Shown here one piece after another: positions 3,582-63,537 of a stretch of 64,000 nucleotides of DNA. The number at the start of each line of letters is the position of its first letter. Position 1 is the first letter of the stretch. Both the position numbers and the translations under genes were made by a program. Where the stretch lies: the NCBI RefSeq assembly GCF_021869535.1, contig NW_026262690.1, positions 73,656,001 through 73,720,000 on the forward strand, given 5' to 3'. This DNA comes from Mytilus californianus (lineage: Eukaryota). The notes below the pieces were generated by a model. The model saw only the letters and a program-made list of their open reading frames with translations, did no database searches and was not told where the DNA came from.

Positions 3582-4026
3582 ACTCTGTTTTCTTGTCAGC
3601 CATTACATTTCGTTGGATAACTGGAAATGAAAAAAAAAATAGTAAAATTTGTTTAAAAATTTTGATCGAATGTTTAATTGTAAAGTTCATATAAATACAA
3701 GATCATTTTGTTTGTAAATAACTACAATTATGATGATCTATAAAGTCTGGCAAAACATGAACCTTGCTATTTATACAACAGTGGATATGTATTATGTACC
3801 AGTAAGGCATCTGAAGTTACTGACATGATTTCAGTAAAACTTTGACAAAATATAAAAACATAAAGCTATTTGTACATTCGTTTTCATATATTTTTAGGCA
3901 TAATGTTTCAAGCATCTCTCAGCAAAACACGGACTTTGAATCAAAGGACTTGTTTGGTCCTTTTCTATTATCTATTATCAATTGTCTCTGATATTACGTT
4001 TTGATTTTCAAATGATTTGGATTCCA

Positions 4027-32421: not shown

Positions 32422-35400
32422 TCATTTGAAACCTGTAAAATAACTAAGTTATTTATAATATTTAGAAAACCATTTAACTATTTCAGAACAGACAATCATT
32501 TCGTTCTTTTTCATTTTTTCACATCATTTTCACGATAACATGCGTTACAAAACATATTTGAATTTATCACACAAACAAATTAACGATGCATTGATGGTGT
32601 TCTGAAATTTGTAACCTTTTCAGTTTTGGCAGATGAATCCACACGGTCCTTCAAAAGCAATTTATACGTTTTGAAGTAATTCAAGACTTTCTGGTGTGGA
32701 TCTGTATAAGAGATATTGTATTTCAACGTGCGCTCGCTGTAGTTTGTGTTTCGGGAATAGCTATCATCTTGTACGTTCGAGACGAAAAGCCAGAGAAAAC
32801 AAAACCAGAACACCTAAGCCTTTAAAGGTCAAGTCATCCTGGCTGAGTAGGAATCTAAGCTGGTTAACAAATATGAACTTGAAAATAGAGACAAAGTAGA
32901 GGCGAAAGATACGAAAGAGACAACCCCGCCGCATTTTGTGCGCCTGTCCCAAGTCAGGAGCCTCTGGCCTTTGTCAGTCTTGTATCATTTTTAATTTTAG
33001 TTTCTTGTGTATAATTTGGAGTTTAGTATGGCGTCCATTATCACTGAACTAGTATACATATTTGTTAAGGGGCCAGCTGAAGGACGCCTCCGGGTGCGGG
33101 AGTTTCTCGCTGCATTGAAGACCCATTGGTGGCCTTCGGCTGTTGTCTGCTCTATGGTCGATTGTGGTCTCTTTGACACATTCCCCATTTCCATTCTCAA
33201 CTTTATTCAAACTCAAAAGTCGAAAATAAACTTGACAACACCATGGCACAATAAAAAAAGACCAAAAGACAAACAACAGTACACAAAAAACAACATAGAA
33301 ATCTAAAGACTGAGCAACACGAACCTTGCCCTAAACCGGGGTGGATCTCAAGAGCTCCGGAAGGGTGAGCAGATCCTGCTCCACACAAACTATATTCAAA
33401 CGTGGCCTCGCAGTACTTTTTTTAGACAATAGATGTGATATGGTTTCTGTTCACGTAACACATGTTTCTGAAATAGCTTTCATATGGTATGTTTGAGATC
33501 AAAACCCAGAAACCACAAAACCAAATACGACCAAAACCAAAACTGCTCAGCTGTTTAAGATAAAGTCCTCCGTGTGGAGTAGGAATCTAAGATTTAAAAC
33601 AATCACCTGCTTTTAAGAACTTGAAACTACAGATAAAATGTATCATTCGATTCATACCAACACAGACGAACAGTCTATTGGGCGGTAGCACTGGTAGGTA
33701 ACCTCGGGTACTGATAATTAACAAGCAGTGTTACTGATATAATTACGTGTTTCTGTAGTGACTTTCATCCGACACGAATGGCCCTGCTCGCAAAAAACGG
33801 TTGAAGCCAGTTTTAGGAGTGGAAATGTGAGAATGAAAGTCCGTATTTATAACTGTTATTTTAACTAAAGTCCAAAGCCCGTAATTTCGGCAAAAATCAG
33901 CGGAGCGGAACCAAACATTAACTCGAACTCATCATAGTAGACTCACATACTAAAAATCAGCTCAATATATGAAGACATTTAGAAAAAAGTCCGTATAACT
34001 GTTATTGAAACCAAAATTTTGAAAGCCCAAAACCAATTATTTCGGCAAAAACCAGCGGAGAGGAACCAAACGTAATCTTGATCTGCAACTCATCATAGTA
34101 GACTCACATACTAAAATTCAGCTCAATATGTGAAGGCGTTTAGAAAATAAAGTTCGTATAACTGTTCGTTGCGGAATGACGGAATGACGGACAAGGGTAA
34201 AACTATATGGCCCTGACCACTTTGTGTCGATGCCATAAAAATAAGTTTTTCTTATAACAAAACATTATCTATTATTTTCAATATTTTTTTTTAAATTCAA
34301 ACCAAAACTTTTCATATACAAATACCTGAGATATTTCTTCTTGAACCTGTGATTACTGTTTCCTTGCTTCCTATTTGCAAAAATCTAGAAAAAAAGGTTT
34401 TATCAAAAATTTTAATCACACTTTTTGTATTTTATTGGTCTGTGGATTTTTCTGAACATGTTTGCTTATTTAAGTTATCTTTATTTGTTTGCTATTCTGG
34501 AAGTGTAGCGTTTAACATATTGTATAGACGCCTGCCTAGCTTATAATACTGCACGTTGATCTCTTGTTGATGATTTTTAATTATTTTCGTACACCAACAT
34601 TTCTTTTTACGCACATTGGTAAAGTCCGCATTAGTCACATTCTTGGTGTTGAAGTTTTAAGTTGCATGTTAGATGATGGTTGATCTTTAAGCTAAAACTC
34701 TCCACCTGTTACTATCTTATTTGTATTGACATATTGCAGTATGTCGTCGATTTGCCTAACAAAATAATAATTCAGACTTCGACCTTAATCAGAGATAGAG
34801 AAAAGATAAAATGTTGATGTGCTCCAACTTGATCAAGTAGTTCTTTATATACATTATGAATAGTAAGTATGGCTACAAGAAAGTCCTGGGTATACGTACA
34901 TGAGACCATATCCCACTGACACAAAAAAAGGTAAAAACATCTGTTTGGGTATAAATCATGAACTGTATTTCACATACAGTAAATATTCTTTGCTTTTGAT
35001 GTACATAAATCAACACTCGTATTCATCTTACACACACAACTTGAGCTACTTTTAATTTCGTCTATATCGGTACACTTTGCACAAACACTTCATGTATGTA
35101 GCCTCCTGTTATAAGTACTGTTTCCCTCGATTTTAAGAAACAAAACCATATTGAGGTAGAGCCAAATTTCCACTGTCTATGTTTCATTAACAGGATCTTA
35201 ATTTGTTTTTTGAATTTTGGATAAATACTAGTACCAAATTTGCAAAAATCTGTGAAAATTTCTACTTTTTGCTAAACATCGGTATTTATAATTTAGTAAT
35301 CTGTTTAGAATTAAGCCATACTATTATTAGAAACTTAAAGTTCATACATTGGGATGTGATATAATGAATTAATGTAAAGATTGAAAGAATTTTTCAAAAT

Positions 35401-38400
35401 GGCCTCGGTTTGAAATAAATTAAGTGGAAAATGGCTCTACGTCTTTCATAAATCACAACTATCATAATAATTTTCAGAATGATTCTATTAAGGATACCTT
35501 GTGGAACTGGTTCACTACATGTTTTTACAGAACAGTCAGTACTACATTCACCCGTCACACTATTTCTACAGTTAAGAGATGGACATGGTAATCCTTGAGG
35601 TACTGTGAAATTAGTACACTGCACAAAAACGTCACAAACTGTTGGGTGTCCCTTTTTTGCACTATCTTTGGTATTGCAATTGCAGATATCTTCTGCAAAA
35701 TTAACAGAAAGATATTTTTATAACATTAATGAGTACATTTAGGAAATAACAAAACATTGAAAATTGTGTAAGAGACATTGCTGGATGTGTCTTTAATGTT
35801 GGACTGGAAGTCATTGATTTCAAACCCAGAGGTCATCACTTGGCTATACAAATTACATCATTATTGACTAATCTTGATGTGTACCTGTTAACAAATCAGG
35901 AAATGCTATTTGGCTCCTATTTTGTTTAGATCTAAATTTGTTTTTCGATTGCTCCCAACTATTTGTGTGACTTTTACTATTTTGGAAACGGTGTTTCTGT
36001 CCTTCACAAATGAAGAGTTTGCGTTGCCTTTTTGTCTTTTACGTACTATTGATGTGTTTGTATACCCATACAGTGCAGGAGCACATAAAACAAGATTAAA
36101 ACGAATCAAACCTGGAATAAGGTGTAAATCTTCTGTGTCTGCAAAAATTTCATTGTTTCCCAAAGAAACGGAATCATTCACAAGACACCGTATTTTACTA
36201 TTGATCATTTCAGGAGAAAACAGCATGCCAAACAGGACTGTCATTGTATTGTTATAGCAATGTTCTCGTTGAATCTTTGTGAATATGATTTTTATGAATT
36301 GATCTTGTAACGGTTCGAAAGACGTCGACCCAGTGTGCTGTATTTCTATAATTAGATTTCTGGGAGGTTCACCGACGTCACCACTGCATACGTGTTCAAA
36401 TCCTGGTCTGTAATATCCCAGATTTATCACCTGATCTTTATTCATTTCTAAGTTTGGATTTGATGGCTTGCCTGTTTAAAACAGAAACATTATTCAAAAC
36501 AGATACTTTCTCCTGGACATATGATGAAGTAATAGTGTATGAATTAATTTTATTAACCATAACTTATAAATAATTAATTCAAAACATATAATTATGAATA
36601 ATATGGTATTGACCTTATATATGAAAATCGGAAAAGAGCGGAATGATTCTTAAACAATGTATAATAGTCTTTGAAAATCTTCATATTAGGATATGTATGA
36701 CTTCAATACGTTTGTAATCTTTCTGTACAGTTTCAGTGATCTGTATTGAAATCTATAGTTGATTACACAAAATGTGCACCATTTGTAAAAATGGTTCAGA
36801 AAAATGATAAATATCCTAACCTTGAAAAAATAAGATTAAAACCCTGGAAGAATTCCGTAAAAGCTAAATGCACAAATAGAATATTTTCAGATTACCGATT
36901 TTTGACTCCGGAGTATAGAATCATGTGCAAAACAGTGTAGCCGAGACCATTGATTGGCGCGCTAAAATATCCCATTGACTGGGTCAGATTAGGTGACCGT
37001 TCGTCTGTAACGCCCACAACTCACGACGTATTTATTATAAACATTTAAACTGTGGGGTCACCAAAGGGTCTCAACGCCTAAATAAAATAATTCGAAAAAC
37101 TAATCAGGAATAACCTTTGTGTTTTGATTTATGTTGAATACTTAAACGTTCTTTACTTGTGTTTTTGTTATGTTTTGATAATGAATTTTTATGATATCGG
37201 ACGTTCTTTCAGCAAAAAAGGATTTAACTGGCTTTAAAAGTTACAATGGATGTGTTGATTATTATCTTTTTTTCGGACGTCAAAGCGATTTAACAATTGC
37301 GGTTGTCCAATTATGTCATCTTTTAACTTTTATCTGGTCAAAATTTTATTTTAGAACGAATGCATGATCAACTTTAAAAAAGTGTGCAAACACAAAACAT
37401 ATAGACAAAATATACTTCTTTCCTGTCTTTTTCGTACTTGCAAGTTATTAGACAGTAAAAAGGCTATTTGGATCAAGCCTTGTGAAATTTGCATTTACGT
37501 TTTTGAATAGGTAAAATGTATAGTTTGATGATCTTTTCTGCTAACTACTATACTTATGAAAAACCCTTGGCAACAGAAACATATTCAGCTTTTTTTTTAA
37601 TCGACCCAATTTACATAGTAATGGACGACTTCGTACATTTTATGATCGCAAATAAAATATGTATATAATATACTGTGCACTGTAGTTCGTATATATACTG
37701 AGACCCTTTGGCAACCCCACAGTTTAAATGTTTATAATAAATACGTCGTGAGTTGTGGGCGTTACAGACGAACGTTCACCTAATCTGACCCAGTCAATGG
37801 GATATTTTAGCGCGCCAATCAATGGTCTCGGCTACACTGTTTTGCACATGATTCTATAATTTTTCGACAGGTTACCTACTCTGGTGCAAGACATTCTGTA
37901 CGGTTAATTAAGTAGGAGTAACCAAAAGAAGTCAAATCAAGTTTTTAATCGGCGCAATTTGGGAGAAATATCTAACTATGTAAGGCATGCTATTTTTTTC
38001 TTAACACGACAAAATCATCGGAAAGCAGTTAATTTTTCCTACAAATTGCACCGATACCTGTGTAATCTTTTTTGTAAATGATTACAAACAATAGGTATCA
38101 TTATCCGCGCCCGTCAAAAATCACCATACTACATGTATGAGGCGATTTTGCACTTCGTATGCAAATCTCAATTGAATTGTTCTTCTTTCTTAGAAAGCAT
38201 AGCAAAAGTTAAGTTTAAAATAAACTAGATCTACTTTCAAGTATATACATTTTAAAAACATATTACCTTATTCTATATATTATGTATAATCTAAGATGTA
38301 TTTGCAATGTTGTCAACATTTCCCGATATTGATATACCATTGTTCTCAAAATTCGGGATTTTTATTTCACAAAAATTTTGTTGTTGTTCAAGATAATTGA

Positions 38401-41400
38401 TATTTACTCTTGCCTTTGCTGTTGAAAGACCTTTCCAACTGAATTTAACAGTTTGTTCTTATGGTGTACTGTTACACCCTGTTTAAGAATAGGGAGTGGG
38501 TTAATCACTCGCAGATATGTTCAACCCTGATACATTCTGTATGTGCCTGTCTCAAACCAGGAGCCTGTAATTCAGTGCACGTGGTTGCTGTCTAACGATT
38601 TGTTAATCTTTTTTCGTTTTATCATAAATTAGCACATTGGTTTTCGTGTTTTAAAATTGTTTGAAATTTTGTTATATAAGGGCATTTTACAGCTCACTAT
38701 ACAATTTGGGTTTTGCTCAATGTTGAAGGCCAAACATTGTCAACATCTACGTCATTCTGGTCCCTGCTGGATATTTATATGATTGGCAATCATACAACAT
38801 CTCCTTATTTTCGTTATAGCAATTTCATTCCCTTCCATGAAATACTATATAATTTTTTCTCTTTCTTTTTTACCTACCCCAAAATTTCTAATCAACTTGA
38901 ACATAAATAAGCACATCTATGGACTATATATTGTTGTACAGTTGTTACTGTAAAATTGCATTACATACATTTTTTAAAGAAGATTTTCATTAAAAAAGTG
39001 TTGACTTCCAATATTACGGATAGATAGACGGACGCACAAATGAAACATTACATGACTTCCCTATCTTTGCTGCAGCACAAAAAACTGGGGCAGTATAAAA
39101 GCCTAAACCATACTGCAGTTGAAACTTTATAAACCCTTAATTGGAAAAGAGATGAGAAAATGAAACTGAAATTTGATACCTTGAGGTTTTCGATTTATTT
39201 ACGCGCGTGTGTGTTTTCTATTCCGTAAATTCAAACATCGCACCAGCATAAACTATATTATAATAAAGCAATATTCCTATTCCTGTGATAAAATATCCGA
39301 CATTTTACACGCTGCCATAATCTATTCTTCTTAATATCTTACGTAAGATTATTAAATGACCATTTGTAGTATATATTTGGTCACTTGTATCAACAACAAC
39401 AGTGTAAGGTCCCTCTGAACCACAAGTCGCTACCATCATTGTAATGGTTAATTTGGTGCCGTCAAAGTCTATTGTTATATTGAATTGTTCCTCTATTGGC
39501 AGCATGCTGACAGAACCATCACTGCTGATGAATCCTAATGTTTTTGTTTCCTCGGTCTCTGAAGCTCTATTGATAGTTATTGAATTAAAAGTTATTCTAT
39601 TCAAATAGCACAGTATTGTTGCGGGACCAGTATTCAAGAAAATCGATGTATTCGTGCACTCTATTGCTGTAAAATAAGTTGGAAATATGAAGCATTAAGT
39701 GCCAGTCTTTGTAAGAATCAGGCAATTTTGAAAAAAATCAAAACATGCCCTAAAAAAACCCACAGACCTAACCATCCTATTTTGAAGTTAACCTCATCCT
39801 GAGTTAGAAATGGTAGGTCTTTCGTTTCTGCGTGTCTGGTAATTCGAGAAATCTCTAGATAAATTTTGGTTAGAATGATAGCAAATTACGAAGTTAGCTC
39901 CCCTTAATTTTTCATTTCTAGTGCATTTCAACCAAATTATATCTTGAATTACCAGAACAGGACAAGGAAACGAATGTTATATTCAAGCACCGTTATACAT
40001 TTTGAACAAAAATTAATGTCAACCTGAGTGGGTTTTTGTTTGTCATGTTTTCACCACTGCCTGATTCTTAGGCAGATTGGCACGTAAAATGTCCTTTTTT
40101 AGATCTAACTTGCAAAGCAATGTTTCATTTTTATAGTTTCTCTTTGAAAGGTTTTTCAAGCTCAGAACCGTATGATACTCATTACCTTTGTTCTATCAAG
40201 TTATATGGCCTTCCAGGGGCCAGCATCATGAAAACCTATCTTAAGCTTCATTTAAGAGATTACTTACGAACGCTTTACGATAACGTTACGATGGTGCTAT
40301 GAGCGTATCTCCAATCCTCTCGTGGTTTACTCTTAACAATTTTACAGCTATCTTAGTATACACGTACGACTGTGAGTTAAGATAGTACTCTTATCGACTT
40401 TTTCGAAATGACCGCCTTTGATTTTTGATGAGAATATTAGAGTTCAAGGCAAAGTCGATAGTAAAAATCATCTGTGCGTTTAATAGAACGGTCGAAAAAC
40501 ACACTTAAATTCAATGCTTGTTTTTATTGTTTGTTCTTATGTTGTACTGTTACACCACTTTACCAGGTTAGGGGAGGGTTGGCGCCTACAAACATGTTTA
40601 CACTCATACCACATCTTCTTATATCTATTAACCCCGCCACATTCTATATGATCCTATATGTGTCTGTCCAAAGCTCGGTCCAAAGTCATTAGTTGATTAT
40701 TGACCATTGAGTGGTTGTCGTTTTTTGCTCAAATGGTTGTCGTTGGTACATGTCTGTCATATATGTTTTTTTCGTAAATTGTTTTGTTAAAAATTAGGCT
40801 GTTAGTTTTCTCAATTGAATAGTGTCATATTTTCCATGTCTATTCCTTTTAAAGCCGACTATACGGTATGGGTGTTTCTAATTGTTGAAGACCCTACGAT
40901 TGCCTATAATAGCTTACATCAACTTCATTTGAACTTTGGTGGATAGTTGCCTATTCTAGAGGTTGAGTGAATCAGATGTGGATACTAAAAAATTCCAAAG
41001 ATCTTTTAGAGTACATACAATCTAAGACTCTCTCATCTTGCAATAGTATTAAAACATTTGACTTTTCTACACTTTACACAAGTATTCCCCATTCCAAACT
41101 AAAAGACAAATTGAAAGAGTTGGTACTAATTTGTTTTATTAAAAAGAACGGCGAACGTAGATACAAGTATCTTGTCTTGGGGAGGGATAAATCCTACTTT
41201 GTAAAGAATCACTCTGATTCTGACAAAAAATTCTCTGAAACGGACATTATCAAGCTGCTTGATTTCTTGATTGACAACATATTTGTTACGTTTGGAGGAC
41301 GTGTTTTTCAATAAACTCAAGGAATTCCAATTGGAACCAATTGTGCCCCTCTTCTTGCCGACTTGTTTCTTTATTGTTATGAGGCTGACTTCATACAGGA

Positions 41401-56400: not shown

Positions 56401-59400
56401 TAATGTGGTTCATAAGTGTTTCTCGTTTCTCGTTATATTAGACCGTTGGTTTTCCCGTTTGAATGGTTTTACACTAGTCATTTTTGGGGTCCTTTATAAT
56501 GTTTATAGCTTGCTGTTCGGTGTGAGCCAAGGCTCCGTATTGAAGGCCGTACTTTGACCTATAATGGTTTACTTTTACAAATTGTAATTTGGATGGAGAG
56601 TTGTCTCATTGGCACTCATACCAAATCTTCTTATATCTATATGAAGTTTGTGTGAGAATTCTGTCTGAATTCAATCTCTTCAAATGCGCTCAATTGTGAG
56701 TGAGAAAAAAGTTTAAACATAAAGTACCTGGACAGTTTTCAAGAACGCATGATTTATATTCAGTACTATTTCCTTGGCATGGTTTTCCACCATTTATTGG
56801 GTTTGGATCATTACACAGTCTAGTTCTCTGTCGAAGAGATGCACCACATGTTTCTGCACACCCAGCCCAGAAAGACCAGCTTCCCCAGTTACCGTTTACT
56901 AAATCAATCAAATGAAAATATTTAAATTAAGGTTACATTGTAAGTTTTGATAAGGTTAAAATACTTTAAATTTTAAGTACCATGATAAAAGATCATGGAA
57001 CAAGAAAGCATGCTCTCCTTTATTGAAACAATATTACAGTTGATATCTTCAACAGTAAAAATACTGTGGCTTCATCTAAAATCTTATTCGGTCACAATTA
57101 AGGGGGGAATTTAGATGTAATGATTGTTTATAAACTTGAATAAGTCCTTGAGTAAGCTAGATACATTCACCAATCTTCTATTGTATGATTGGTGATCACT
57201 TGAAAGGACCAATGTACATATTTAACAGGAGCAGCACGCCGACTGTCGCTAGTGGAGCAGACACGAGCATTCATCTCCGGTTTTTAGTTCGTTTTGCACC
57301 CCGTAAGCTGAACGATTATAGTAAAATTCCTATTGAAAAAAAAAAGTTTTATAAAATTATTTGCAAGCACATGCTTACAATGCTACACTGGTTCTACGCT
57401 AATGCTAGTAGTTACTGCTTCACTACTGACATGGTTTTAACAAATATTTCTTAAATTTATAAATTATTAGGAAACTTAGGTTGCTTATCCTTCAACTTAA
57501 TAGACCTAAGTTTGTTTTAACTATCCTTTTTGGGTCAGATGTGGCCATACAGCTACTAAAATATTTATAAATCCCTGGCCTTCAAATGTGGCTTTAAGTG
57601 TAAATACATAACGTTAAGATGTAAGGATTTAATTCTAATAGAAATACCTTGTAAGGATGGTTCTGTTGTTTGAGCCGGAATTGTGCCATCTGATGTAACA
57701 TTTGAAACACCTGCTTGTGTTGTTATTTCCTCCGCTGTGGTCATATCTTTTTCAGGTGCTGTTGTATCGTTAGAAACAACATTTGCACCTACTGTCGTAG
57801 ATGTTATACTGGAAACCGTTGGTTGGACGTTTTCTGACGATTCATTAGGCGTCGAACTTGACCGGACACTGGTTGATTGTGCTGGCGTCACAAAACTTTC
57901 AATAGTTGTTGTCATTGTTCTATTTGTTTCCTCAGTGGGATATGTAATTTTAGAAGTAATGGAAGACATTTGGGATGATGTGTCATTTGATGGGGTTGTG
58001 ACAGCAAGTGATGTGGTACTTATATCTGGTAAAGAGCTTATGTTTACGTTTTGCGATGTTACAAGCTTTGACGTAAAGGTAGACAATTTATCAGCTGTTG
58101 TGTGGGCTGTTGTTGTAACCTTTGAGTTGGTAGTTGATGTAAATAGTTTCTGAAGTTCTGGTGGTTCTTGTAAATGTATAGTTGACACTTGAACGATTTC
58201 AAAACTGCCCAATAAAATCTGAAATCCCCCTAGCATTTGATTCCCACTTCTAAGTATATCATCCTTGATATATTTTACAGATTGATTTAACATGTATGAC
58301 TCTGGTATGTCTACACAATACACAGTACATGATACTTTGATACTTCCTGGACTGTAATAAACAAAATCGTATTGAAAATAAACAATTTTAGGGACGACAT
58401 CAAAAGTTCAATGTAGGATAAAAAACTTAATTCACATAGTTTTTTCACTGACCCCACCCCCCCTCTTAACTTAATTTGGGAAAAATTGATTGACCAATAT
58501 GGATATATGTAAAATCGATTTTGGATAAACAAAACTTGAAGCAATTTTAACCCCCCACCCCCAAACTATTTGATTTAAGTTTTTTATCCTACATTGATCT
58601 TTTGATGTCGTCCCTTATTCAGATAAGTCGATCAATTTACTTATATTTTAAGATAATTTTATTGTAATATGTAGTGCAATTTTTGATTAGCAGTATCTTT
58701 TTTCAAAATTGCTCTTTTTCACTTCTTACCAAAGTCTATGATAACTTTAAGTTTGAAAGGAAATGCTCGGGTAGCTTGTCAATGTACGATTTGAAGGACA
58801 ACGAAGGGACAAACTTTAAAAATTCCGTTGTCCTGTTATGTCACATCTAAATCTAAAAAAAGAAGATATTTCTCTAAACTAAAGCAATAGCAAATGTATT
58901 ACCTCATACTAAATTTATCAGATATTAAAAAAAAAAGAATAATATAAACTGTTGTCTGCTCTATGGTCGGGTTGTTGTCTTTTTGACACATTCCCATTTC
59001 CATTCTCAATTTTATGATACTTACTTTAGAGCTAGTACGATGCAACCAATATAATCATCACCAAAGCCACCAGTATTATTATTTAGCACTCTATCAATCT
59101 GAAAGTACATCTTCTGCATTTGACCATCTTTGGTACAATCTTTCTCTTATTTTGTGAAAACATAGATAATTCTATTTCAAAAACTCTTTGCAATCGCGAA
59201 TTGGTAATGGAAATATTAGCACAAGTATACTACACGTTACTATGCGTATATAGTAGTTGACCCGTCTTTCCGTCAGTCGCTTTGGTTTTCGGATGCTCAA
59301 TCAGACATTTTGTATTATTCTTTTAGGTCATTACGTCTAGGATCAAGGTTTTAGTAACTAAAATAGACCGCAACTTTGCACAGAAAAGCAGTTCTCGCTT

Positions 59401-62400
59401 GCTAAATCAAATAATATATTTGGGATTGCAACCTAACTTGGATATATAGTCACATATATAATGAGATGAAGAACCCTGTTTGCAGTCACTACGTCATAGG
59501 TCAAGGTCGAGGTTACTTAAAATAGATCGACATTTGTGCAGGAAAATCGTTTCCGGATACTAAATCAGAACAACTTTACTTGGATATATGGTCGCATATG
59601 ATGAGAGAAAGATCTCTGTTTGTTTTGAGGTCTCTTCGTGTAAGAGAGAGGCGAAAGATGCCAAAGGGACATTCAAACTCATAAGTCGAAAACAAACTGA
59701 CAACGCCATGGCTAAGAAAGAAAAAGACAAACAGTACAAACATAACATAGAAAAATAACGACTGAGCATCACGAACCCCGGCCACCAAACACTGGGACCG
59801 ATCTTATGTGCTCTGGAAGGGCACGTACATCCTGCTCTACTTGTGGCAACCGTCGTGTTGTTCATGGGAGTACAACCCCGATGATAAGTCTAATTCGGTA
59901 GGTCACATTCGGGGAAAAGAGGAAGGTCAAGGTCAAAGTCATAGCTACTAAAATAGATTATTTTTGTTTGACAATATTACTGAAAAGAATCAAAACTGAA
60001 GGTTAATAAGAAAAAGCATATTATTATGCCAGCAGGTTATTACATAAGTTTTCCCCTTTATATGAGTTTGTTGGCTAAAGGTTCTTGAACTTTGCAAAGC
60101 ATCACAAATGTTTTTGAACAGCTCATGTAAAAGTAGTATTCATAAAATTGTATTAATATGTAATGAACAATTCAGGAATCAATATCATACACTCCCAAAT
60201 TATATGTACGAATATCCTATTATTTTGTTAACTTTTGTTTGTTCATGTTATATATGTACTTTCTTGAATGTTTGTTTTATAACTAGAATGAACGAATCGA
60301 TAACGCAGTTGATAATAATAAAGATTTAAATCTGTAAAATTGAATAAACTTGCCTCTTTGAAACGCTTTAAAGTTACTGTTGATTTCCGCCAATTTGAAA
60401 TAAACAAATTTTCCATGGACTTTGGTAAATTGTTTTTTTGAACACAGTTTTGTCGTTTATGTGTGATTTATAATGTAATAGCGGATGGACCGATGAAATA
60501 TTGATTTACAATGCAATTTGGATAAATAATAATATTTCGTATTAAGAATTTTCAAGTATTATACCTTATTTAATATAATACATACCTCAGCACAAAAGTC
60601 AGAGGCAAAACGTTTATATCTGTATGACATACTGTTACTCAAATCTGGTATATAGCTAGCGTTTACTGTCAGGTCAATCAAAGCATGAACTGTAGAACAT
60701 ACATAAAGTAAGTATATGTAGCGTATTAACAAATATGTATACTATATGTATTATGCCAAAAGTAAAATTATTGTAAAAAAATGAAAATTATTGTATATTG
60801 TAACTATTCTAATTTCAACTTTGTTTCATACTTTCTTTTCAAAGTCCTATCTATTTTCTTTTCTTTTTAGTTATTACCAATGAAAAGTATTTGAAAATAC
60901 TCAACAATTCCAACCCTCCGTCAGTAAACCTTTGTAGATAGCAGGTTCTACTAGAATTTAATATCATAAGACGAAAAGGCTATTATCATCAATATATATA
61001 TTAGCTAAATGAACTAACCGTATGCAGTCGTTTGTGTTTTCGATTCTGAAATAAAAAAATATGATATTGTCATATTTGGAGTCTATTCTTTCTATTATCT
61101 AATTTGCTTTCATAAATTGGCGAAAAACAATAGTAAGCGAAAAAAACTGTAGAGATATTATCCGGAATGAGTGACGATTCCTCCGAGAGTTCCCCGGGAT
61201 ACATTTTGTTCTAGTTTCTCCCTCCGAGGGATACAACGCTCCCGGAAACGTTTTCCGTTATTCTGTGCGAGAGGTACAAATTGTAAAAATAAAACATATC
61301 CGGCGTTTTGCATATGCGCCAATATGCACTTCATTTGCGCCAATTTTTTTTTATTTCCGCCATTTTTTTTTTATTTATCTGCGCCACTATTTTTTTCATT
61401 TCCACCAATTTACGGGTAAACACAAATCATGAGACAATAAGTTGGACAAAACATAACGCGAAACAGAAGACACGTACGTATTTAGAACCTCATCTGCAAA
61501 CTCAACACACTTTTCATCAGTTTGTGCCTAAGACTTTATGCAAAGTAATTACCTACTTCATCTGCGGAAAGAAATTGCAGGATACAAAATTGAGATCTCC
61601 TTCTCCCAGTTTTACTTGACTTCTCCTCGAAATCGACGAAGGGAAACATTCACTAAAACGTTGTGCATTGCTTGTTTAAATGAAATTGGCGCAAATGAAA
61701 ATGAAAAATTGACGCAAATAAAACTTTGTTTTGGCGCAAATGAAAAAAGTGGTATTTTCAAATTTGGCGCAAATTTCATACGCCCAATATGTCAATGAGG
61801 ACCTCAATGAGTAGTTTATGGTTTCAATCTATGATATGGGATGAAAATGTCAAAGGTTTAATGACAAAGCTGAAAAACCCTAAATTTATGTATTTCTTTT
61901 AAAATAATAGATGGTATGCATTCTCAACGATAAAAACATTATCCAAATTGAAAGTTTTTTAGGGACCCATGCAAATAATGTTTTGAGAAAAAAAAAACTA
62001 AAAAGAAAAATATGCTCTAATATTTGGTAAGCTTACGGACAGATATAGGATCCTGATTTTTACTGGACTACTTTGTCTCTATTTTAAAAACACATTCATT
62101 TGTCAAACAAAGCCATAAAACTAAATTCAATTTTCAAACTCTATAATTACGTTTATTGCAATAATATACCAACCTGATTCAGTATTATCATTTTTACTGG
62201 AAGTTGACACAGCAATGACGATCAGAATGACTGTCAACATGGCAACACCAACAAACAACAATGTATATACTACTTTCTTCTTCCATGTGATAGGTGATTT
62301 TGTTTCGTCAGGTGTCGATGGAACATTCTCATCTACCTTATATTTTGATTCTTGGCCGACAGACTTGAACTGTAGCAAAACAGAAAAAAAATCAAATGGA

Positions 62401-63537
62401 GTTACTGATTCAAACACATTTTAAATTTGATAACAGTTCATTAAACTATACATGTGAACTTGCCAATATGGCCTGTTCTAGTTTACATACACAACACATA
62501 ACCCGTATTATACAGGCACATCAAAATGAATTTTCTGAGCTATATTCTTTTCATAAGTTAATACCAAGTTTAAAAGGTTAATTTTTAATTCGGATTAATT
62601 TTTGAAATCTAATGAATATTAACTACATGACCGGAAAAGCGATAGAAATAGAAATGTCTAAAATCTCTATGTTACCTTATAACATTATGATGTACCTTAA
62701 AACTTAAATCAAAAGTTACACTAAACTGAGTCAAACAAGGCTACGGAATAAGAGCAATTTCATAGAAAATGAATATTAATTTAAAAATTAATTCTTATAT
62801 TTTGTAACTATGAACTTGTTTCATCAATTTCATACATGTAATTTCATTCCATAATAAAGAACTTACTTAAAACCATATATACTTACTTTCTGCATGAATT
62901 TGGACCACATGGTATCATTATCAGTGTTACTTATATCAGTTTTATTTAAACCTGAATCACTAACATATCCATTTGTATGTCGAACAGTTGAAACCTCTAA
63001 TTCGTTTTCTTTTATAGGAATAGATTCTATGAAATGGATTTCGTCATGATTGCCACCAGGTGATTTTACAGCTCTTTTCTTATGTGTTATGATTTCCTTT
63101 CGAAATTCTGTTTCTTCTACCTCTATATCCTCGCTATCTGTTGCCAAAGTTATTTCATTATCTGAGATATATTGACATTTTGGTTCATGTAAGTTTAAAC
63201 TGGCACTATTTTGCCTATAGAAGTCTTTTTCCCTTGCCTTTCCATTTACGCTGCTCGGGGCCACAATATCATATTCATCTGTTTCGTTTTTCAATTCGGC
63301 TTCATCTATTTCAAGACTGGCACGTTTATTCTGTACACCAGATACACATAATTGTATTTCTTCGTGATGGAGATTACTTCCAGTCTCATCGATTATGTTA
63401 ATTGATATTTCATTTTGGTGCAAATCCGATCCTTCGCTCCATAACCCGCCATTTGGAAGATCGTCTGCAATAGTTTCTCCAATTATTCCAATGTCATGAA
63501 ATTCTGTATCTCTACCAAATTCTTTATCTTTTGACAT
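32422..63537 (-). CDS. Large type II transmembrane multidomain protein (~1,790 aa): acidic cytosolic tail, TM, SEA, mucin, 7xTSP1, 6 Ig-like, 2 CBM14/peritrophin-A-like (hemicentin-like by naive annotation)
   Basis: 20 phase-consistent GT-AG exons: 63537-62887, 62369-62174, 60689-60586, 59098-59025, 58351-57648, 56898-56728, 56008-55838, 55221-55057, 54579-54406, 54100-53930, 53476-53303, 51533-51363, 50346-50029, 49632-49282, 48660-48340, 47227-46868, 46050-45853, 39666-39343, 36471-36112, 35692-35498 (5353 nt). The terminal exon is uncertain; the best acceptor is at 32432 and gives GFK*. Confidence 0.85.
32898..33385. mobile_element. Family-1 retroelement trailer (minus) interrupted by a family-3 trailer (plus, ~32922-33206)
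   Basis: The flanks rejoin as gagaca|ttcaaactc, matching the uninterrupted copy at 59646 onward. Confidence 0.6.
33830..34240 (+). mobile_element. HINE/pearl-like element
   Basis: Two ~150-bp core repeats, CGGAATGA microsatellite, terminal hairpin. Confidence 0.6.
35498..35692 (-). CDS. CBM14/peritrophin-A-like module 2 exon
   Basis: HPTVCDVFVQC...CP, 9 Cys, paralogous to module 1. Confidence 0.78.
36112..36471 (-). CDS. Ig-like domain B3 exon
   Basis: KPSNP...VCSGDVGEPP...IRCLVND. The donor gtttga is weak but sits at the same position as in B1 and B2. Confidence 0.75.
36914..37858. mobile_element. 945-bp non-autonomous DNA transposon with 160-bp TIRs and TA termini
   Basis: 36914-37073 versus the reverse complement of 37699-37858: 3 mismatches in 160 bp. 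Confidence 0.85.
38440..38810 (+). mobile_element. Degenerate family-2 trailer copy
   Basis: gcctgtctcaaaccaggagcctgt...gattggcaatcatacaacatct. Confidence 0.55.
39343..39666 (-). CDS. Ig-like domain A3 exon
   Basis: ECTNTS...ILC...TCGSEGPYTV, phase 1-1. Confidence 0.8.
40953..42208 (+). mobile_element. 5'-truncated Penelope-like retroelement (Naiad-type, family 1): RT pseudogene plus 3' trailer
   Basis: RT motifs TFDFSTLYTSIPH, GIPIGTNCAPLLADLFL, RYTDDVL and thumb YISQLIRYSRAC. The ORF ends with no C-terminal GIY-YIG. In-frame TAA at 41312, frameshift near 41410. 7-bp TSD GTTGCCT/GTTGTCT. Confidence 0.8.
42290..43830 (+). mobile_element. Degenerate Penelope-like element (family 2): RT C-terminus (42290-43110) plus 3' trailer (43110-43830)
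   Basis: RDKFSFPIDNFPFFDGDVP...GVYILKLVRY...LLSQGFR...FYGDVVYRA; several stops; interrupted by a MITE. Confidence 0.7.
42644..42940. mobile_element. 297-bp MITE with ~13-bp TIRs and a 6-bp TSD (TTGTTT)
   Basis: gagggttgtaatg / cattcctaccctc; TTGTTT at 42638-42643 and 42941-42946; removal restores the RT frame. Confidence 0.85.
44870..45100 (+). mobile_element. HINE core-repeat remnant
   Basis: aaagggacataactc...caaattcgaacttg...tataagtttcataac core resembling the other HINEs. Confidence 0.4.
45215..45500 (+). mobile_element. Family-2 trailer copy
   Basis: aatccgccacattc...gttgtctcattgacaatcatac. Confidence 0.6.
45853..46050 (-). CDS. CBM14/peritrophin-A-like module 1 exon
   Basis: HPGRCDYYVEC...C, 9 Cys, phase 1-1. 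Confidence 0.78.
46868..47227 (-). CDS. Ig-like domain B2 exon
   Basis: PEKPTL...HCYGNVGYPPG...LRCRVEN, phase 1-1. Confidence 0.8.
47337..47600. repeat. Minisatellite, ~10 copies of a 26-bp unit (GTGTTGCTGTCAA[G/T]TGAGGAAGTTTG)
   Basis: Head-to-tail units at 26-bp period, no spacers. Confidence 0.95.
47872..48152 (+). mobile_element. pearl/MgE-like HINE
   Basis: AACAAGAATGTGTC 5' end, core unit, GACG microsatellite, terminal hairpin remnant. Confidence 0.65.
48340..48660 (-). CDS. Ig-like domain A2 exon
   Basis: KCTDVS...TC...TCDDEGDYML, phase 1-1. Confidence 0.8.
49072..49115 (-). ncRNA. Degenerate type I hammerhead motif, same family as 4374-4415
   Basis: Minus strand: GCATCA CTGAAAA aatattgatt GTC GAAAT GCGC ATC TGATGC; perfect stem I, broken stem II. 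Confidence 0.55.
49282..49632 (-). CDS. Ig-like domain B1 exon
   Basis: KPTVP...QCSGNIGKPTG...MRCRVQN, phase 1-1. Confidence 0.8.
50029..50346 (-). CDS. Ig-like domain A1 exon
   Basis: SCTD...IAC...TCEDDGFYVV, phase 1-1. Confidence 0.8.
51363..51533 (-). CDS. TSP1 repeat 7 exon
   Basis: WSNWNEWDKCSLPCG...RNRSC, phase 1-1. Confidence 0.88.
52395..52710 (+). mobile_element. SINE body and tail ending in (CAAT)n
   Basis: Central ggaacgtcaaat...cctcgtg...acgttaagaac segment resembles conserved bivalve SINE cores; tail atttgccactggacgtttagcaaacaacaatcaat; head missing. Confidence 0.45.
53060..53079. repeat. (TA)10 microsatellite
   Basis: Direct reading. Confidence 0.9.
53303..53476 (-). CDS. 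TSP1 repeat 6 exon
   Basis: WSPWGTWDVCSVTCG, phase 1-1. Confidence 0.9.
53701..53726. repeat. (TA)13 microsatellite
   Basis: Direct reading. Confidence 0.9.
53930..54100 (-). CDS. TSP1 repeat 5 exon
   Basis: WGDWTPWEKCSKTCG...RSRDC, phase 1-1; not in the ORF track. Confidence 0.88.
54406..54579 (-). CDS. TSP1 repeat 4 exon
   Basis: WSTWLTWGECSLTCG...RNRTC, phase 1-1. Confidence 0.9.
55057..55221 (-). CDS. TSP1 repeat 3 exon
   Basis: WSQWSLWSSCDVTCG...RSRSC, phase 1-1; frame missed by the ORF track. Confidence 0.88.
55838..56008 (-). CDS. TSP1 repeat 2 exon
   Basis: WTQWSPWSACNVTCG, phase 1-1. Confidence 0.9.
56372..56640 (+). mobile_element. Family-2-variant trailer copy
   Basis: Reverse complement of 13471-13730. 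Confidence 0.65.
56728..56898 (-). CDS. TSP1 repeat 1 exon
   Basis: WGSWSFWAGCAETCG...RTRLC, phase 1-1. Confidence 0.9.
57648..58351 (-). CDS. Large gene exon 5: SEA end (PGSIKV) plus S/T-rich mucin stalk
   Basis: ttattacag| acceptor, phase 2-1, 704 nt. Confidence 0.85.
58391..58614. mobile_element. 224-bp PIF/Harbinger-type MITE with ~45-bp TIRs and TTA TSD
   Basis: GGGACGACATCAAAAG...CTTTTGATGTCGTCCC; TTA at 58388-58390 and 58615-58617. Confidence 0.85.
59025..59098 (-). CDS. Large gene exon 4: SEA domain, part 2
   Basis: actttcag| IDRVLNNNTGGFGDDYIGCIVLAL |gtaagt, phase 0-2. Confidence 0.78.
59646..59925 (-). mobile_element. Family-1 retroelement trailer inserted in a HINE-like element (~59280-59960)
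   Basis: Reverse complement of ~41925-42208; flanks rejoin the aggtcaaggtc core. Confidence 0.65.
60586..60689 (-). CDS. Large gene exon 3: SEA domain, part 1
   Basis: ttctacag| VHALIDLTVNASYIPDLSNSMSYRYKRFASDFCAE |gtatgt. Confidence 0.8.
61293..61795. mobile_element. ~500-bp foldback element with repeated GCGCCAA / TTGGCGC motifs
   Basis: Motif clusters at 61310-61390 and 61685-61790 are inverted relative to each other; imperfect terminal IRs; no TSD resolved. Confidence 0.5.
62174..62369 (-). CDS. Large gene exon 2: signal-anchor TM (KKK-VVYTLLFVGVAMLTVILIVIAV)
   Basis: gctacag| acceptor; the basic cluster N-terminal to a 22-aa hydrophobic helix implies N-in topology. Confidence 0.85.
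62887..63537 (-). CDS. Large gene exon 1: acidic, probably disordered cytosolic region (217 aa)
   Basis: acacaag|GATAATG acceptor, no signal peptide, |gtaagt donor. Confidence 0.82.

What the first reader, a model, noticed from the sequence alone, without database searches (positions are those of the whole stretch)
32422..63537. Unusual type II membrane protein: SEA-mucin-7xTSP1-(Ig-Ig)2-CBM14-(Ig-Ig)-CBM14
Seen: no signal peptide, a ~250-aa acidic N-terminus, KKK followed by one TM, a SEA domain with PGSIKV at the G-S cleavage position, an S/T stalk, then adhesion and chitin-binding-like modules. Known: TM followed by SEA in type II orientation is typical of type II transmembrane serine proteases, but no protease domain is present here; SEA domains can autocleave at GSVVV-like sites. 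Inference: a sheddable or force-sensitive tether linking epithelium to a chitinous matrix (shell, periostracum or gut), next to a Pif-like gene. I do not recognise this architecture as a named family, and automated annotation would probably call it hemicentin-like. This is the strongest candidate for an undescribed system in the window.
Basis: partly seen in the sequence, partly recalled or inferred. Interest (0 to 1): 0.75.

Follow-up and report, generated by a model that had tools for sequence, protein, structure and literature searches.

The report
Membrane-anchored mussel SEA-mucin adhesion protein
This is one real mussel gene for a large cell-surface protein, anchored by its front end, that holds thrombospondin, antibody-like and chitin-binding-like modules out on a sugar-coated stalk; it belongs to a mollusc-wide family that nobody has studied, and its function is still a guess.

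Summary
On the minus strand, 22 canonical exons (63537 to 34371) form one open frame of 1810 codons. It encodes an acidic 249-residue N-terminus without a signal peptide, then KKK and one transmembrane helix. A SEA domain follows, with G-S in the beta2-beta3 turn, then a 176-residue S/T stalk and seven Pfam TSP1 repeats. Last come three V-set + C2-set Ig pairs; the second and third pairs are each followed by a divergent CBM14-type cysteine module.

- The SEA domain has a middle exon (59098-59025).
- A small linker exon lies at 45126-45061.

The gene is LOC127737073 of Mytilus californianus. Its RefSeq model is truncated at the N-terminus. Models from M. coruscus, M. trossulus and M. edulis carry the full type II front end, and one spliced contig confirms the exon 1-exon 2 joint.

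The architecture without TSP1 recurs across bivalves and in Haliotis. Every member is labelled uncharacterized, and I found no paper on them. Only Mytilus has the TSP1 block.

The proposed function is a sheddable, chitin-directed surface receptor or tether. That is inferred, not shown. I class it as a new variant of known kinds, of moderate interest.

The parts
62887..63537 (-). Exon 1: start ATG at 63537; acidic, hydrophilic cytoplasmic N-terminus (217 codons); donor in phase 0
   Evidence: ORF and donor. 95% identical to the N-terminus of the M. coruscus model P0103. A spliced contig of run X1 joins 62887 to 62369 (record 7). No Pfam hit.
62174..62369 (-). Exon 2: end of the cytoplasmic part, W-KKK, single transmembrane helix, short S/N-rich spacer; phase 0 to 1
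   Evidence: Hydropathy peak 2.96 and the only TM-like segment in the ortholog. The X1 contig covers 62369-62174 exactly and runs 10 letters further.
60586..60689 (-). SEA exon 1 (strand beta1 and start of helix alpha1); phase 1 to 0
   Evidence: Present in P0103, P0106 and P0108. Aligned with family SEA domains.
59025..59098 (-).
   Evidence: The phase mismatch called for it. Found through P0001 and P0103. Borders checked.
57648..58351 (-). SEA exon 3 (P-G-S-I-K-V, beta3-alpha2-beta4) followed by the 176-residue S/T-rich stalk; phase 2 to 1
   Evidence: The SEA fold model has G-S in the beta2-beta3 turn and Foldseek hits to TMPRSS6 and MUC16 SEA. An X1 contig lies on 57884-58336.
56728..56898 (-). 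TSP1 repeat 1 (phase 1-1 exon)
   Evidence: Pfam TSP_1, E 1.5e-9; borders.
55838..56008 (-). TSP1 repeat 2
   Evidence: Pfam TSP_1, E 1.6e-13.
55057..55221 (-). TSP1 repeat 3
   Evidence: Pfam TSP_1, E 4.9e-16.
54406..54579 (-). TSP1 repeat 4
   Evidence: Pfam TSP_1, E 1.6e-11.
53930..54100 (-). TSP1 repeat 5
   Evidence: Pfam TSP_1, E 1.6e-12.
53303..53476 (-). TSP1 repeat 6
   Evidence: Pfam TSP_1, E 7.2e-11.
51363..51533 (-). TSP1 repeat 7
   Evidence: Pfam TSP_1, E 1.3e-14.
50029..50346 (-). Ig V-like domain 1
   Evidence: Pfam Ig_3 0.0026, weak. Aligns with the other two V-like exons. Fold shown for copy 3.
49282..49632 (-). Ig C2-like domain 1 (not followed by a cysteine module)
   Evidence: No Pfam hit. 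Three copies align. The profile finds only 102 representatives among 1.84 billion proteins.
48340..48660 (-). Ig V-like domain 2
46868..47227 (-). Ig C2-like domain 2
45853..46050 (-). Cysteine-rich module 1: divergent CBM14-type (9 Cys in the exon, a 10th in the next)
   Evidence: No direct Pfam hit. 55% identical to module 2. Profile link to CBM14-positive family modules.
45061..45126 (-).
   Evidence: Present in P0001, P0103, P0106 and P0107; AG/GT borders and phase 1-1.
39343..39666 (-). Ig V-like domain 3
   Evidence: Pfam V-set 7.5e-4 on the exon and 4.5e-8 on the ortholog; fold model.
36112..36471 (-). Ig C2-like domain 3
   Evidence: The fold model matches the V-C2 pairs of CD166, Lutheran, RAGE and nectin.
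35498..35692 (-). Cysteine-rich module 2: divergent CBM14-type; ends in a phase-1 donor, so the gene continues
34371..34384 (-). Terminal exon, version A: D-F-C-K-stop; used by the RefSeq models of M. californianus and M. galloprovincialis
32422..32431 (-).

Best explanation
Shown: 63537-34371 (minus strand) is one protein-coding gene, LOC127737073 of Mytilus californianus. It encodes a single-pass type II membrane glycoprotein of about 1810 residues.

From the N-terminus the protein has:
- an acidic cytoplasmic part;
- a transmembrane helix;
- a membrane-proximal SEA domain with an invariant G-S in the beta2-beta3 turn;
- an S/T-rich stalk;
- seven TSP1 repeats;
- three V-set/C2-set Ig pairs, the second and third each capped by a divergent CBM14-type module.

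It is the TSP1-bearing Mytilus member of a mollusc-wide family with the plan type II TM - SEA - mucin stalk - (V-C2-CBM14)n.

Inferred mechanism: the SEA domain cuts itself at G|S during folding. The anchor (cytoplasmic part, helix and first half of SEA) then holds the whole ectodomain only non-covalently. The O-glycosylated stalk lifts the binding modules above the cell surface. The V-C2-CBM14 units and TSP1 repeats bind a chitin-containing or glycan-rich partner, either matrix or microbes. Pulling on the bound ectodomain separates the SEA halves and sheds it. In short, it would be a force-sensitive, releasable tether or receptor.
For: Gene structure:
- 22 exons with AG/GT borders and matching phases give 1810 codons and one stop.
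- The model is identical to RefSeq protein P0001 from residue 11 to the end.
- The M. coruscus (P0103), M. trossulus RefSeq (P0106) and M. edulis (P0108) models all join exon 1, the TM exon and the three SEA exons to the rest.
- A spliced contig of run X1 joins 62887|62369 and ends at the predicted donor 62174.

Domains:
- Seven TSP_1 repeats.
- SEA: Pfam 25.9 bits on the ortholog and 40-66 bits on paralogs. The fold model is beta-alpha-beta-beta-alpha-beta with G-S between strands 56-65 and 68-78. Top Foldseek hits are TMPRSS6 and MUC16 SEA. The closest sequences are TMPRSS11-type SEA domains.
- V-C2 pair: pLDDT 90.6, with CD166, Lutheran, RAGE and nectin-4 as best matches.
- CBM14 link.

Topology: there is one hydrophobic segment, no signal peptide, and KKK on the N-terminal side. 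The same layout occurs in 11 family members from Mytilus, Ylistrum, Pecten, Sinanodonta, Saccostrea, Dreissena and Haliotis.

Mechanism by analogy: G-S-[VI] is invariant in 12 family SEA domains. GSVVV/GSIVA motifs self-cleave in the beta2-beta3 loop, and the halves stay together until force is applied (PMC6954182, PMC10556640).
Against: - No experiment or read shows cleavage, topology, glycosylation or any ligand.
- The motif is G-S-I-K-V, with a lysine where cleaving SEA domains usually have a hydrophobic residue. Pfam SEA on the ortholog is 0.5 bit under the gathering score.
- The two cysteine modules do not reach Pfam CBM_14 and have R where relatives keep an aromatic residue, so chitin binding may be lost.
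- Transcript support in this species covers only the exon 1-exon 2 joint and part of the stalk exon. The RNA raw-read run X4 gave no reads on any exon in the 6% of the run sampled.
- RefSeq for this species did not extend the model to exon 1.
- The 3' end is unsettled.
Confidence: 0.5

Rival explanations
1. Immune or mucus reading. The protein is a membrane-tethered counterpart of the protochordate VCBPs. Its Ig V domains bind microbes and its CBM14-type modules bind chitin in mucus or fungal walls at gill or gut epithelia. SEA-mediated shedding releases the bound cargo, as a decoy.
For: The repeated Ig-Ig-CBM14 unit mirrors the VCBP plan of Ig V regions plus one chitin-binding domain, whose two parts bind bacteria and chitin independently (PMC6414549). 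The family is expanded and clustered in molluscan genomes, as is usual for immune-type gene families. The V-C2 pair resembles RAGE VC1 and CD200R as well as adhesion molecules.
Against: The second Ig domain is C2-type, not V. I tested no sequence homology to VCBPs. There are no expression data from gut, gill or haemocytes, and hypervariability was not tested. The CBM14-type modules here are the divergent kind.
Confidence: 0.2
2. One reading: a tether between mantle epithelium and the chitinous shell or periostracum matrix, working together with the neighbouring Pif-like gene.
For: CBM14-type modules are present. The next gene downstream encodes a secreted protein with a laminin-G-type domain, and this pairing is kept in M. 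trossulus. One M. edulis model even joins the two genes. Chitin-binding domains are part of the bivalve shell toolbox (PMC8382897).
Against: Being neighbours is weak evidence for shared function. No mantle expression or shell-proteome record was found. RefSeq keeps the two genes apart, and in M. trossulus a retrotransposon lies between them.
Confidence: 0.2
3. A plain cell-cell or cell-matrix adhesion receptor. The cysteine modules are only structural spacers and the SEA domain does not cleave. Binding goes through the TSP1 repeats and the nectin/ALCAM-like V-C2 pairs.
For: The best structural matches of the Ig pair are homophilic or heterophilic adhesion molecules: CD166, Lutheran, nectins. 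One aromatic position of the CBM14 core is lost. The lysine in G-S-I-K-V departs from the usual motif.
Against: G-S-[VI] is invariant across the family. The module keeps the H-P...C-x-[YF]-[YF/V]-x-C core of CBM14, and paralogs pass the Pfam threshold.
Confidence: 0.15
4. Gene-model artefact. Either the type II front end (exons 1-3) belongs to a separate transcript from the RefSeq gene, or the true product runs on into the downstream laminin-G gene.
For: The RefSeq model for this species starts at 59119 and calls nothing over exons 1-3.
Against: A split would cut the SEA fold in two. The RefSeq start uses intron-derived codons upstream of the real acceptor. Three other Mytilus models and the phases support continuity. 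The downstream gene has its own signal-peptide exon and is called apart in two RefSeq annotations. The M. edulis model also skips an Ig exon, so it is of lower quality.
Confidence: 0.08

Closest known systems
Type II transmembrane serine proteases (TMPRSS6/matriptase-2, TMPRSS11 HAT/DESC group, enteropeptidase)
   Same: N-terminal cytoplasmic tail, one signal-anchor helix, then a SEA domain next to the membrane. These proteins give the best SEA matches by fold (TMPRSS6) and by sequence (TMPRSS11D, TMPRSS11A and mouse transmembrane protease SEA).
   Different: There is no serine-protease domain anywhere. The ectodomain is a mucin stalk plus TSP1, Ig and CBM14-type modules.
SEA-type transmembrane mucins (MUC1, MUC16 and relatives)
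   Same: An S/T-rich stalk plus a SEA domain with a G-S site next to the membrane. MUC16 SEA domains are among the top fold matches. The proposed behaviour is the same: self-cleaved, held together non-covalently, shed under force (PMC6954182, PMC10556640, PMC6491460).
   Different: These mucins are type I, with a C-terminal anchor; this protein has the opposite orientation. Its stalk is short (176 residues) and not made of tandem repeats, and it carries large folded binding modules beyond the stalk.
[quoted passage not shown]
   Same: Two Ig domains followed by one peritrophin-type chitin-binding domain form the functional unit (PMC6414549).
   Different: VCBPs are small, secreted, V-V proteins with a single unit and occur in chordates. 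Here the unit is V-C2, repeated, sits on a membrane-anchored SEA-mucin stalk, and occurs in molluscs. The likeness is in architecture; homology was not tested.
Hemicentin / SCO-spondin / coadhesin (the labels given by automatic annotation)
   Same: Runs of TSP1 repeats and Ig domains. The TSP1 block is 38-47% identical to SCO-spondin-like proteins.
   Different: There are no VWA, EGF, nidogen G2F, LDLa or fibulin-type modules. Those proteins are secreted, not type II anchored, and lack SEA and CBM14.
Nectin / ALCAM (CD166) / Lutheran / RAGE N-terminal V-C2 pairs
   Same: These are the best structural matches of the Ig pair: Foldseek E about 1e-11 to 1e-10, TM about 0.55-0.74.
   Different: Sequence identity is only 13-16%, and Pfam does not recognise the C2-like domain. 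Its profile finds only molluscan proteins.

Membership tests
SEA domain (Pfam PF01390) | Alpha/beta sandwich, beta-alpha-beta-beta-alpha-beta | tested here: met
   The AF2 model of the ortholog's domain (pLDDT 79.4, pTM 0.78) has that order of elements. The seven best Foldseek hits are all SEA domains, at E 1e-6 to 1e-3.
SEA domain (Pfam PF01390) | Pfam score at or above the gathering score | tested here: inconclusive
   The ortholog P0103 scores 25.9 bits against a cut-off of 26.4. Paralogs P0002 (40.4 bits) and P0020 (65.9 bits) pass. Single exons of the window give no hit.
SEA domain, self-cleaving subtype | G-S-[VI]-x-[VA]-type motif in the beta2-beta3 turn | tested here: met
   G67-S68 are invariant in 12 family SEA domains and lie between strands 56-65 and 68-78. 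The motif here is G-S-I-K-V. Location as in PMC6954182.
SEA domain, self-cleaving subtype | Actual autoproteolysis | not testable with these tools
   Needs expression of the domain and a Ser-to-Ala control.
Type II transmembrane serine proteases | N-terminal cytoplasmic tail, signal anchor, SEA-containing stem | tested here: met
Type II transmembrane serine proteases | C-terminal trypsin-fold protease domain | tested here: not met
   No Trypsin or other protease family appears in the Pfam scans of any exon or of the full ortholog.
SEA-type transmembrane mucins | Type I orientation with a C-terminal anchor and long tandem-repeat PTS domain | tested here: not met
   The only hydrophobic segment is at residues about 250-272, with none at the C-terminus. 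The stalk is 176 residues with 40% S+T, and I saw no tandem repeat in its translation by eye; no repeat finder was run on it.
Thrombospondin type 1 repeat (PF00090) | Pfam hit above the cut-off, W-x-x-W-x-x-W and the six-Cys pattern | tested here: met
   Seven hits of 38-59 bits against a cut-off of 21.6. Seven WxxWxxW motifs; five repeats also carry C-x-x-[ST]-C-x-x-G.
CBM14 / peritrophin-A chitin-binding domain (PF01607) | Direct Pfam hit | tested here: not met
   No CBM_14 hit at E <= 0.1 for either module of the window or on the full ortholog.
CBM14 / peritrophin-A chitin-binding domain (PF01607) | Homology to modules that are CBM14 | tested here: met
   hhalign of the window-type profile against the family profile gives probability 96.4%, E 1.2e-9. 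22 of 32 family modules hit CBM_14, best 3.9e-8. P0018 and P0020 pass the gathering score.
CBM14 / peritrophin-A chitin-binding domain (PF01607) | Chitin binding | not testable with these tools
   One conserved aromatic position is R in both modules. This needs a pull-down.
VCBP | Secreted; two V-type Ig domains plus one C-terminal chitin-binding domain | tested here: not met
   The protein is membrane-anchored. The second Ig domain matches the membrane-proximal C-type domain of V-C pairs such as CD166 D1-D2, nectin-4 D1-D2 and RAGE VC1. The units are repeated. The likeness is one of plan only (PMC6414549).
Hemicentin | N-terminal VWA, long Ig array, G2F, EGF and fibulin-type C-terminus | tested here: not met
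   None of these families appears on the full ortholog.
Mollusc family: type II TM - SEA - mucin - (V-C2-CBM14)n (unnamed) | Hydrophilic N-terminus, one helix, SEA, S/T stalk, then one or more V-C2-CBM14 units | tested here: met
   The layout is shared with P0018, P0020, P0036, P0053, P0066, P0086 and P0095. The window gene differs by the seven TSP1 repeats, which appear with this plan only in Mytilus.

The most novel reading that the evidence does not exclude
Molluscs have an undescribed family of type II, SEA-jointed, mucin-stalked surface receptors carrying repeated V-C2-CBM14 units. On this reading they are a convergent, membrane-anchored counterpart of protochordate VCBPs. They would capture chitin-bearing particles or microbes at filter-feeding epithelia and release them by force-driven separation of the SEA halves. 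The Mytilus gene would have widened its binding range by taking up seven TSP1 repeats.
Probability: 0.2. Interest if true: 0.75.

Novelty: new variant of a known kind. Interest (0 to 1): 0.5.

Why it matters
If the reading holds, it gives molluscs a defined surface protein family that joins three well-studied ideas in a new arrangement: self-cleaving SEA joints as mechanical fuses, mucin stalks, and Ig plus chitin-binding recognition units.

That would make two open questions testable in bivalves. One is how epithelia hold on to chitinous matrices. The other is how filter feeders handle chitin-bearing microbes without antibodies.

In practical terms, this work corrects a truncated RefSeq model and shows that 'hemicentin' and 'SCO-spondin-like' labels hide a distinct family. 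As it stands the finding is an architecture with no functional data.

Tried and rejected
- Pfam on single exons found no SEA, no CBM14 and only weak Ig hits, because the domains are split across exons or divergent. Scans of full database orthologs and profile comparison resolved this.
- PDB sequence searches with the cysteine-module profile and the C2-like profile returned nothing at E <= 10.
- My first scan for the missing SEA exon failed because its polypyrimidine filter was too strict. The exon was found through P0001 and P0103.
- RNA raw-read run X4 gave reads only on high-copy intronic repeats and none on exons, so it neither supports nor splits the model.
- A search for transcript-derived protein fragments spanning TM-SEA found one hit, and it is unspliced genomic sequence.
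- Paper searches by accession, by 'SEA domain + thrombospondin + Mytilus' and by VCBP-like terms found no description of this gene or family.
- The SEA + TSP1 'SCO-spondin-like' Mytilus paralog P0109 has no Ig or CBM14 modules and is a different family.
- The hemicentin and TTSP labels were rejected on missing defining domains.
Full report
**Scope and method**

The window has no N runs. Exons were searched one at a time by reference. For whole-protein questions I used database proteins by their ids (P0001, P0103, P0106 and others).

One local script concatenated exon coordinates, but only to check frame continuity and count features.

**1. What is in the sequence**

All coding potential of the finding lies on the minus strand. 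Twenty-two exons with canonical AG/GT borders and matching phases give one frame of 1810 codons and a single terminal stop.

| Exons | Window coordinates (minus strand) |
|---|---|
| Exon 1 (acidic N-terminus) | 63537-62887 |
| Exon 2 (KKK + helix) | 62369-62174 |
| SEA exons | 60689-60586, 59098-59025, 58351-57648 (the last also holds the stalk) |
| TSP1 exons 1-7 | 56898-56728, 56008-55838, 55221-55057, 54579-54406, 54100-53930, 53476-53303, 51533-51363 |
| Ig V/C pair 1 | 50346-50029, 49632-49282 |
| Ig V/C pair 2 | 48660-48340, 47227-46868 |
| Cysteine module 1 | 46050-45853 |
| Linker exon | 45126-45061 |
| Ig V/C pair 3 | 39666-39343, 36471-36112 |
| Cysteine module 2 | 35692-35498 |
| Terminal exon | 34384-34371 |

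From the stalk onwards every exon is phase 1-1, the usual signature of shuffled modules.

**2.

- **N-terminus.** It is hydrophilic with no signal peptide. There are 249 residues before the helix, pI 4.75.
- **Membrane segment.** W-KKK precedes the only hydrophobic segment.
- **TSP1.** Seven exons pass Pfam TSP_1 (E 1.5e-9 to 4.9e-16). All seven have WxxWxxW, and five have C-x-x-[ST]-C-x-x-G.
- **Stalk.** 176 residues, 40% S+T.
- **SEA.** The first SEA exon ends in phase 0, but the exon starting P-G-S-I-K-V begins in phase 2. The missing 74-nt exon at 59098-59025 is present in the database models.
- **Linker.** A second small exon, D-F-C plus a T/S/P-rich spacer, lies between cysteine module 1 and the third V domain.

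**3. Identity and gene-model support**

The profile of the three C2-like exons was scored against 1.84 billion representative proteins. The top hit, P0001, is XP_052103565.1, 'uncharacterized protein LOC127737073 [Mytilus californianus]'. It is identical to the window model from its residue 11 to its end. The gene span also matches that of the GenBank assembly GCA_021869535.1.

That RefSeq model is truncated. It starts at an ATG in intron-derived sequence just upstream of the middle SEA exon. It lacks exon 1, the membrane exon and the first SEA exon, and no gene is called over them.

Three other Mytilus models carry the full front end, joined exactly as the phases predict:
- M. coruscus CAC5391878.1 (P0103, 1871 aa);
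- M. trossulus RefSeq LOC134710771 (P0106, 1825 aa, 79% identity over 96% of P0103);
- M. edulis 'HMCN' (P0108).

Read evidence in this species is thin but positive. A 337-nt contig of run X1 lies on 63017-62887 and then on 62369-62174, which is the exon 1-exon 2 splice. It runs 10 letters past the predicted donor. Another X1 contig covers 57884-58336 in the stalk exon.

The only RNA run with raw reads (X4, 6% sampled) gave no reads on any exon, only on high-copy intronic repeats. Continuity from the membrane exon through the SEA exons to the rest therefore rests on three things: the phases, the need for all three SEA exons to build one fold, and the orthologous models. It does not rest on reads.

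**4. The 3' end is not settled**

The last cysteine module ends in a phase-1 donor. There are three candidate continuations.

- **D-F-C-K-stop at 34384-34371.** The RefSeq models of M. californianus and M. galloprovincialis use this. It fits the family rule that D-F-C follows the module.
It is orthologous to the terminal exon (G-S-V-stop) of the M. trossulus RefSeq model.
- **Read-on into the downstream gene.** The M. edulis model continues into that gene's large exon.

The downstream gene has its own signal-peptide exon starting near 30033. It is called separately in two RefSeq annotations, and in M. trossulus a retrotransposon lies in between. The M. edulis model also skips an Ig exon. I take the fused form as unlikely to be the main product.

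**5. Domain identities**

*SEA.* Pfam on the full ortholog gives 25.9 bits, 0.5 below the cut-off; paralogs score 40-66 bits. An AlphaFold model built from a 12-sequence family alignment has pLDDT 79.4 and pTM 0.78. It shows beta-alpha-beta-beta-alpha-beta, with the invariant G-S exactly between strands 56-65 and 68-78. The seven best Foldseek hits are TMPRSS6, MUC16 SEA domains and a mouse transmembrane-protease SEA. By sequence the nearest solved SEA domains are TMPRSS11-type, followed by ADGRF1 and agrin.

*Ig pair and cysteine module.* A model of V3-C3-module 2 from a 30-sequence alignment has pLDDT 90.6 and pTM 0.81. Its Ig pair matches the V-C2 pairs of CD166, Lutheran glycoprotein, RAGE VC1, nectin-4 and nectin-1.

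The cysteine modules (55% identical to each other, 9-10 Cys) do not hit Pfam CBM_14 directly. Their profile aligns with the family's modules at 96.4% probability, E 1.2e-9. Of those modules, 22 of 32 hit CBM_14, and two paralogs pass the gathering score.

The window type keeps H-P...C-D-[YV]-[YF]-V-x-C but has C-R-N-S where relatives have C-F. I therefore call them divergent CBM14-type modules. Whether they bind chitin is open.

**6. The family**

The C2-like profile finds only 102 representatives at E <= 0.001. Every named one of the 30 looked up is a mollusc, apart from one marginal bacterial hit. The genera are Mytilus, Pecten, Ylistrum, Saccostrea, Tegillarca, Sinanodonta, Potamilus, Mercenaria, Mactra, Mya, Dreissena and the gastropod Haliotis.

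Eleven members share the same front end: a hydrophilic N-terminus of 18-290 residues, one helix, then SEA. Several then have a long mucin region and one to several V-C2-CBM14 units.

All are labelled uncharacterized, hypothetical, 'mucin-5AC-like' or 'Ig-like/chitin-binding domain-containing'. The full plan with seven TSP1 repeats appears only in Mytilus. Paralogs lie close to the gene in other Mytilus genomes. I found no paper on the gene or the family.

**7. How it most likely works**

Shown: the architecture and the type II layout by sequence.

Inferred:
- The SEA domain self-cleaves at G|S. GSVVV/GSIVA motifs do this in the same beta2-beta3 loop, and the halves stay together until force is applied (PMC6954182; PMC10556640).
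- In a type II protein this leaves the anchor holding the whole ectodomain non-covalently.
- The stalk lifts the TSP1 and V-C2-CBM14 modules away from the membrane. These bind a chitin-bearing or glycan-rich partner, and load on that bond can shed the ectodomain.

Which partner is unknown. The Ig-Ig-CBM14 unit parallels VCBPs, whose Ig and chitin-binding parts bind bacteria and chitin independently in the Ciona gut (PMC6414549). The neighbouring laminin-G gene is only weak support for the shell reading.

**8. Comparison with known families and verdict**

- It works like a TTSP stem or a SEA-type membrane mucin at the membrane, and like a VCBP or nectin-type module at the tip.
- It is not a TTSP, because it has no protease domain.
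- It is not a classical membrane mucin, because the orientation is opposite.
- It is not a VCBP: it is anchored, its unit is V-C2, and the unit is repeated.
- It is not hemicentin: it has no VWA, EGF or G2F modules.

It is a new variant built from known parts, within an undescribed mollusc family. The functional interpretation is plausible but untested.

Noticed in passing
window 59119-59099 and 62174-63537: RefSeq XP_052103565.1 (M. californianus) is truncated at the N-terminus. It starts at an ATG in intron-derived sequence and omits exon 1, the membrane exon and the first SEA exon. Three other Mytilus models and one spliced contig support these exons.
   Followed up: yes
window 35250-35236 and 34384-34371 (minus): There are two near-identical copies of the short D-F-C-K coding piece, each behind a good acceptor. 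The upstream copy is followed by a possible phase-1 donor, so it could act as a micro-exon rather than an end.
   Followed up: partly
window 26093-30033 (minus): The downstream gene has its own signal-peptide exon (start about 30033), a long disordered exon ending in a cysteine pattern, and laminin-G-type exons. RefSeq calls it a separate 519-aa protein. An M. edulis model fuses it to the gene studied here. In M. trossulus a Pao-type retrotransposon lies between the two genes.
   Followed up: partly
window 58949-59015 and 59560-59900: High-copy repeats lie inside the SEA introns, with word depths up to about 1e6 in DNA-like runs. They are also present in RNA run X4 on both strands. One carries the small ORF with F-E-C-P-F-G-I-F that recurs elsewhere in the window (about 33200 and 52100).
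   Followed up: no
window 40967-41910 (+): Two adjacent ORFs lie in the 5.4-kb intron, with a reverse-transcriptase-like Y-T-D-D motif seen by eye. Pfam gives no hit at E <= 0.1. This is probably a decayed retroelement.
   Followed up: partly
window 2490-3602 (-): A single open stretch of 371 codons has an OTU cysteine-protease domain (Pfam OTU, E 8.9e-12) behind two copies of an internal repeat.
   Followed up: no
other Mytilus genomes (no window coordinates): Paralogous V-C2-CBM14 genes sit within a few genes of the ortholog in M. coruscus (CAC5391884 against CAC5391878) and M. galloprovincialis (LOC143068639 against LOC143068637). This suggests a local family cluster just beyond the window's upper end.
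   Followed up: no
window 57884-58336 and 62174-63017: Contigs of run X1, labelled as the same species, differ from the window by about 4% in coding exons (20 of 453 letters and 14 of 327). This could be high allelic diversity or a mislabelled close relative.
   Followed up: no
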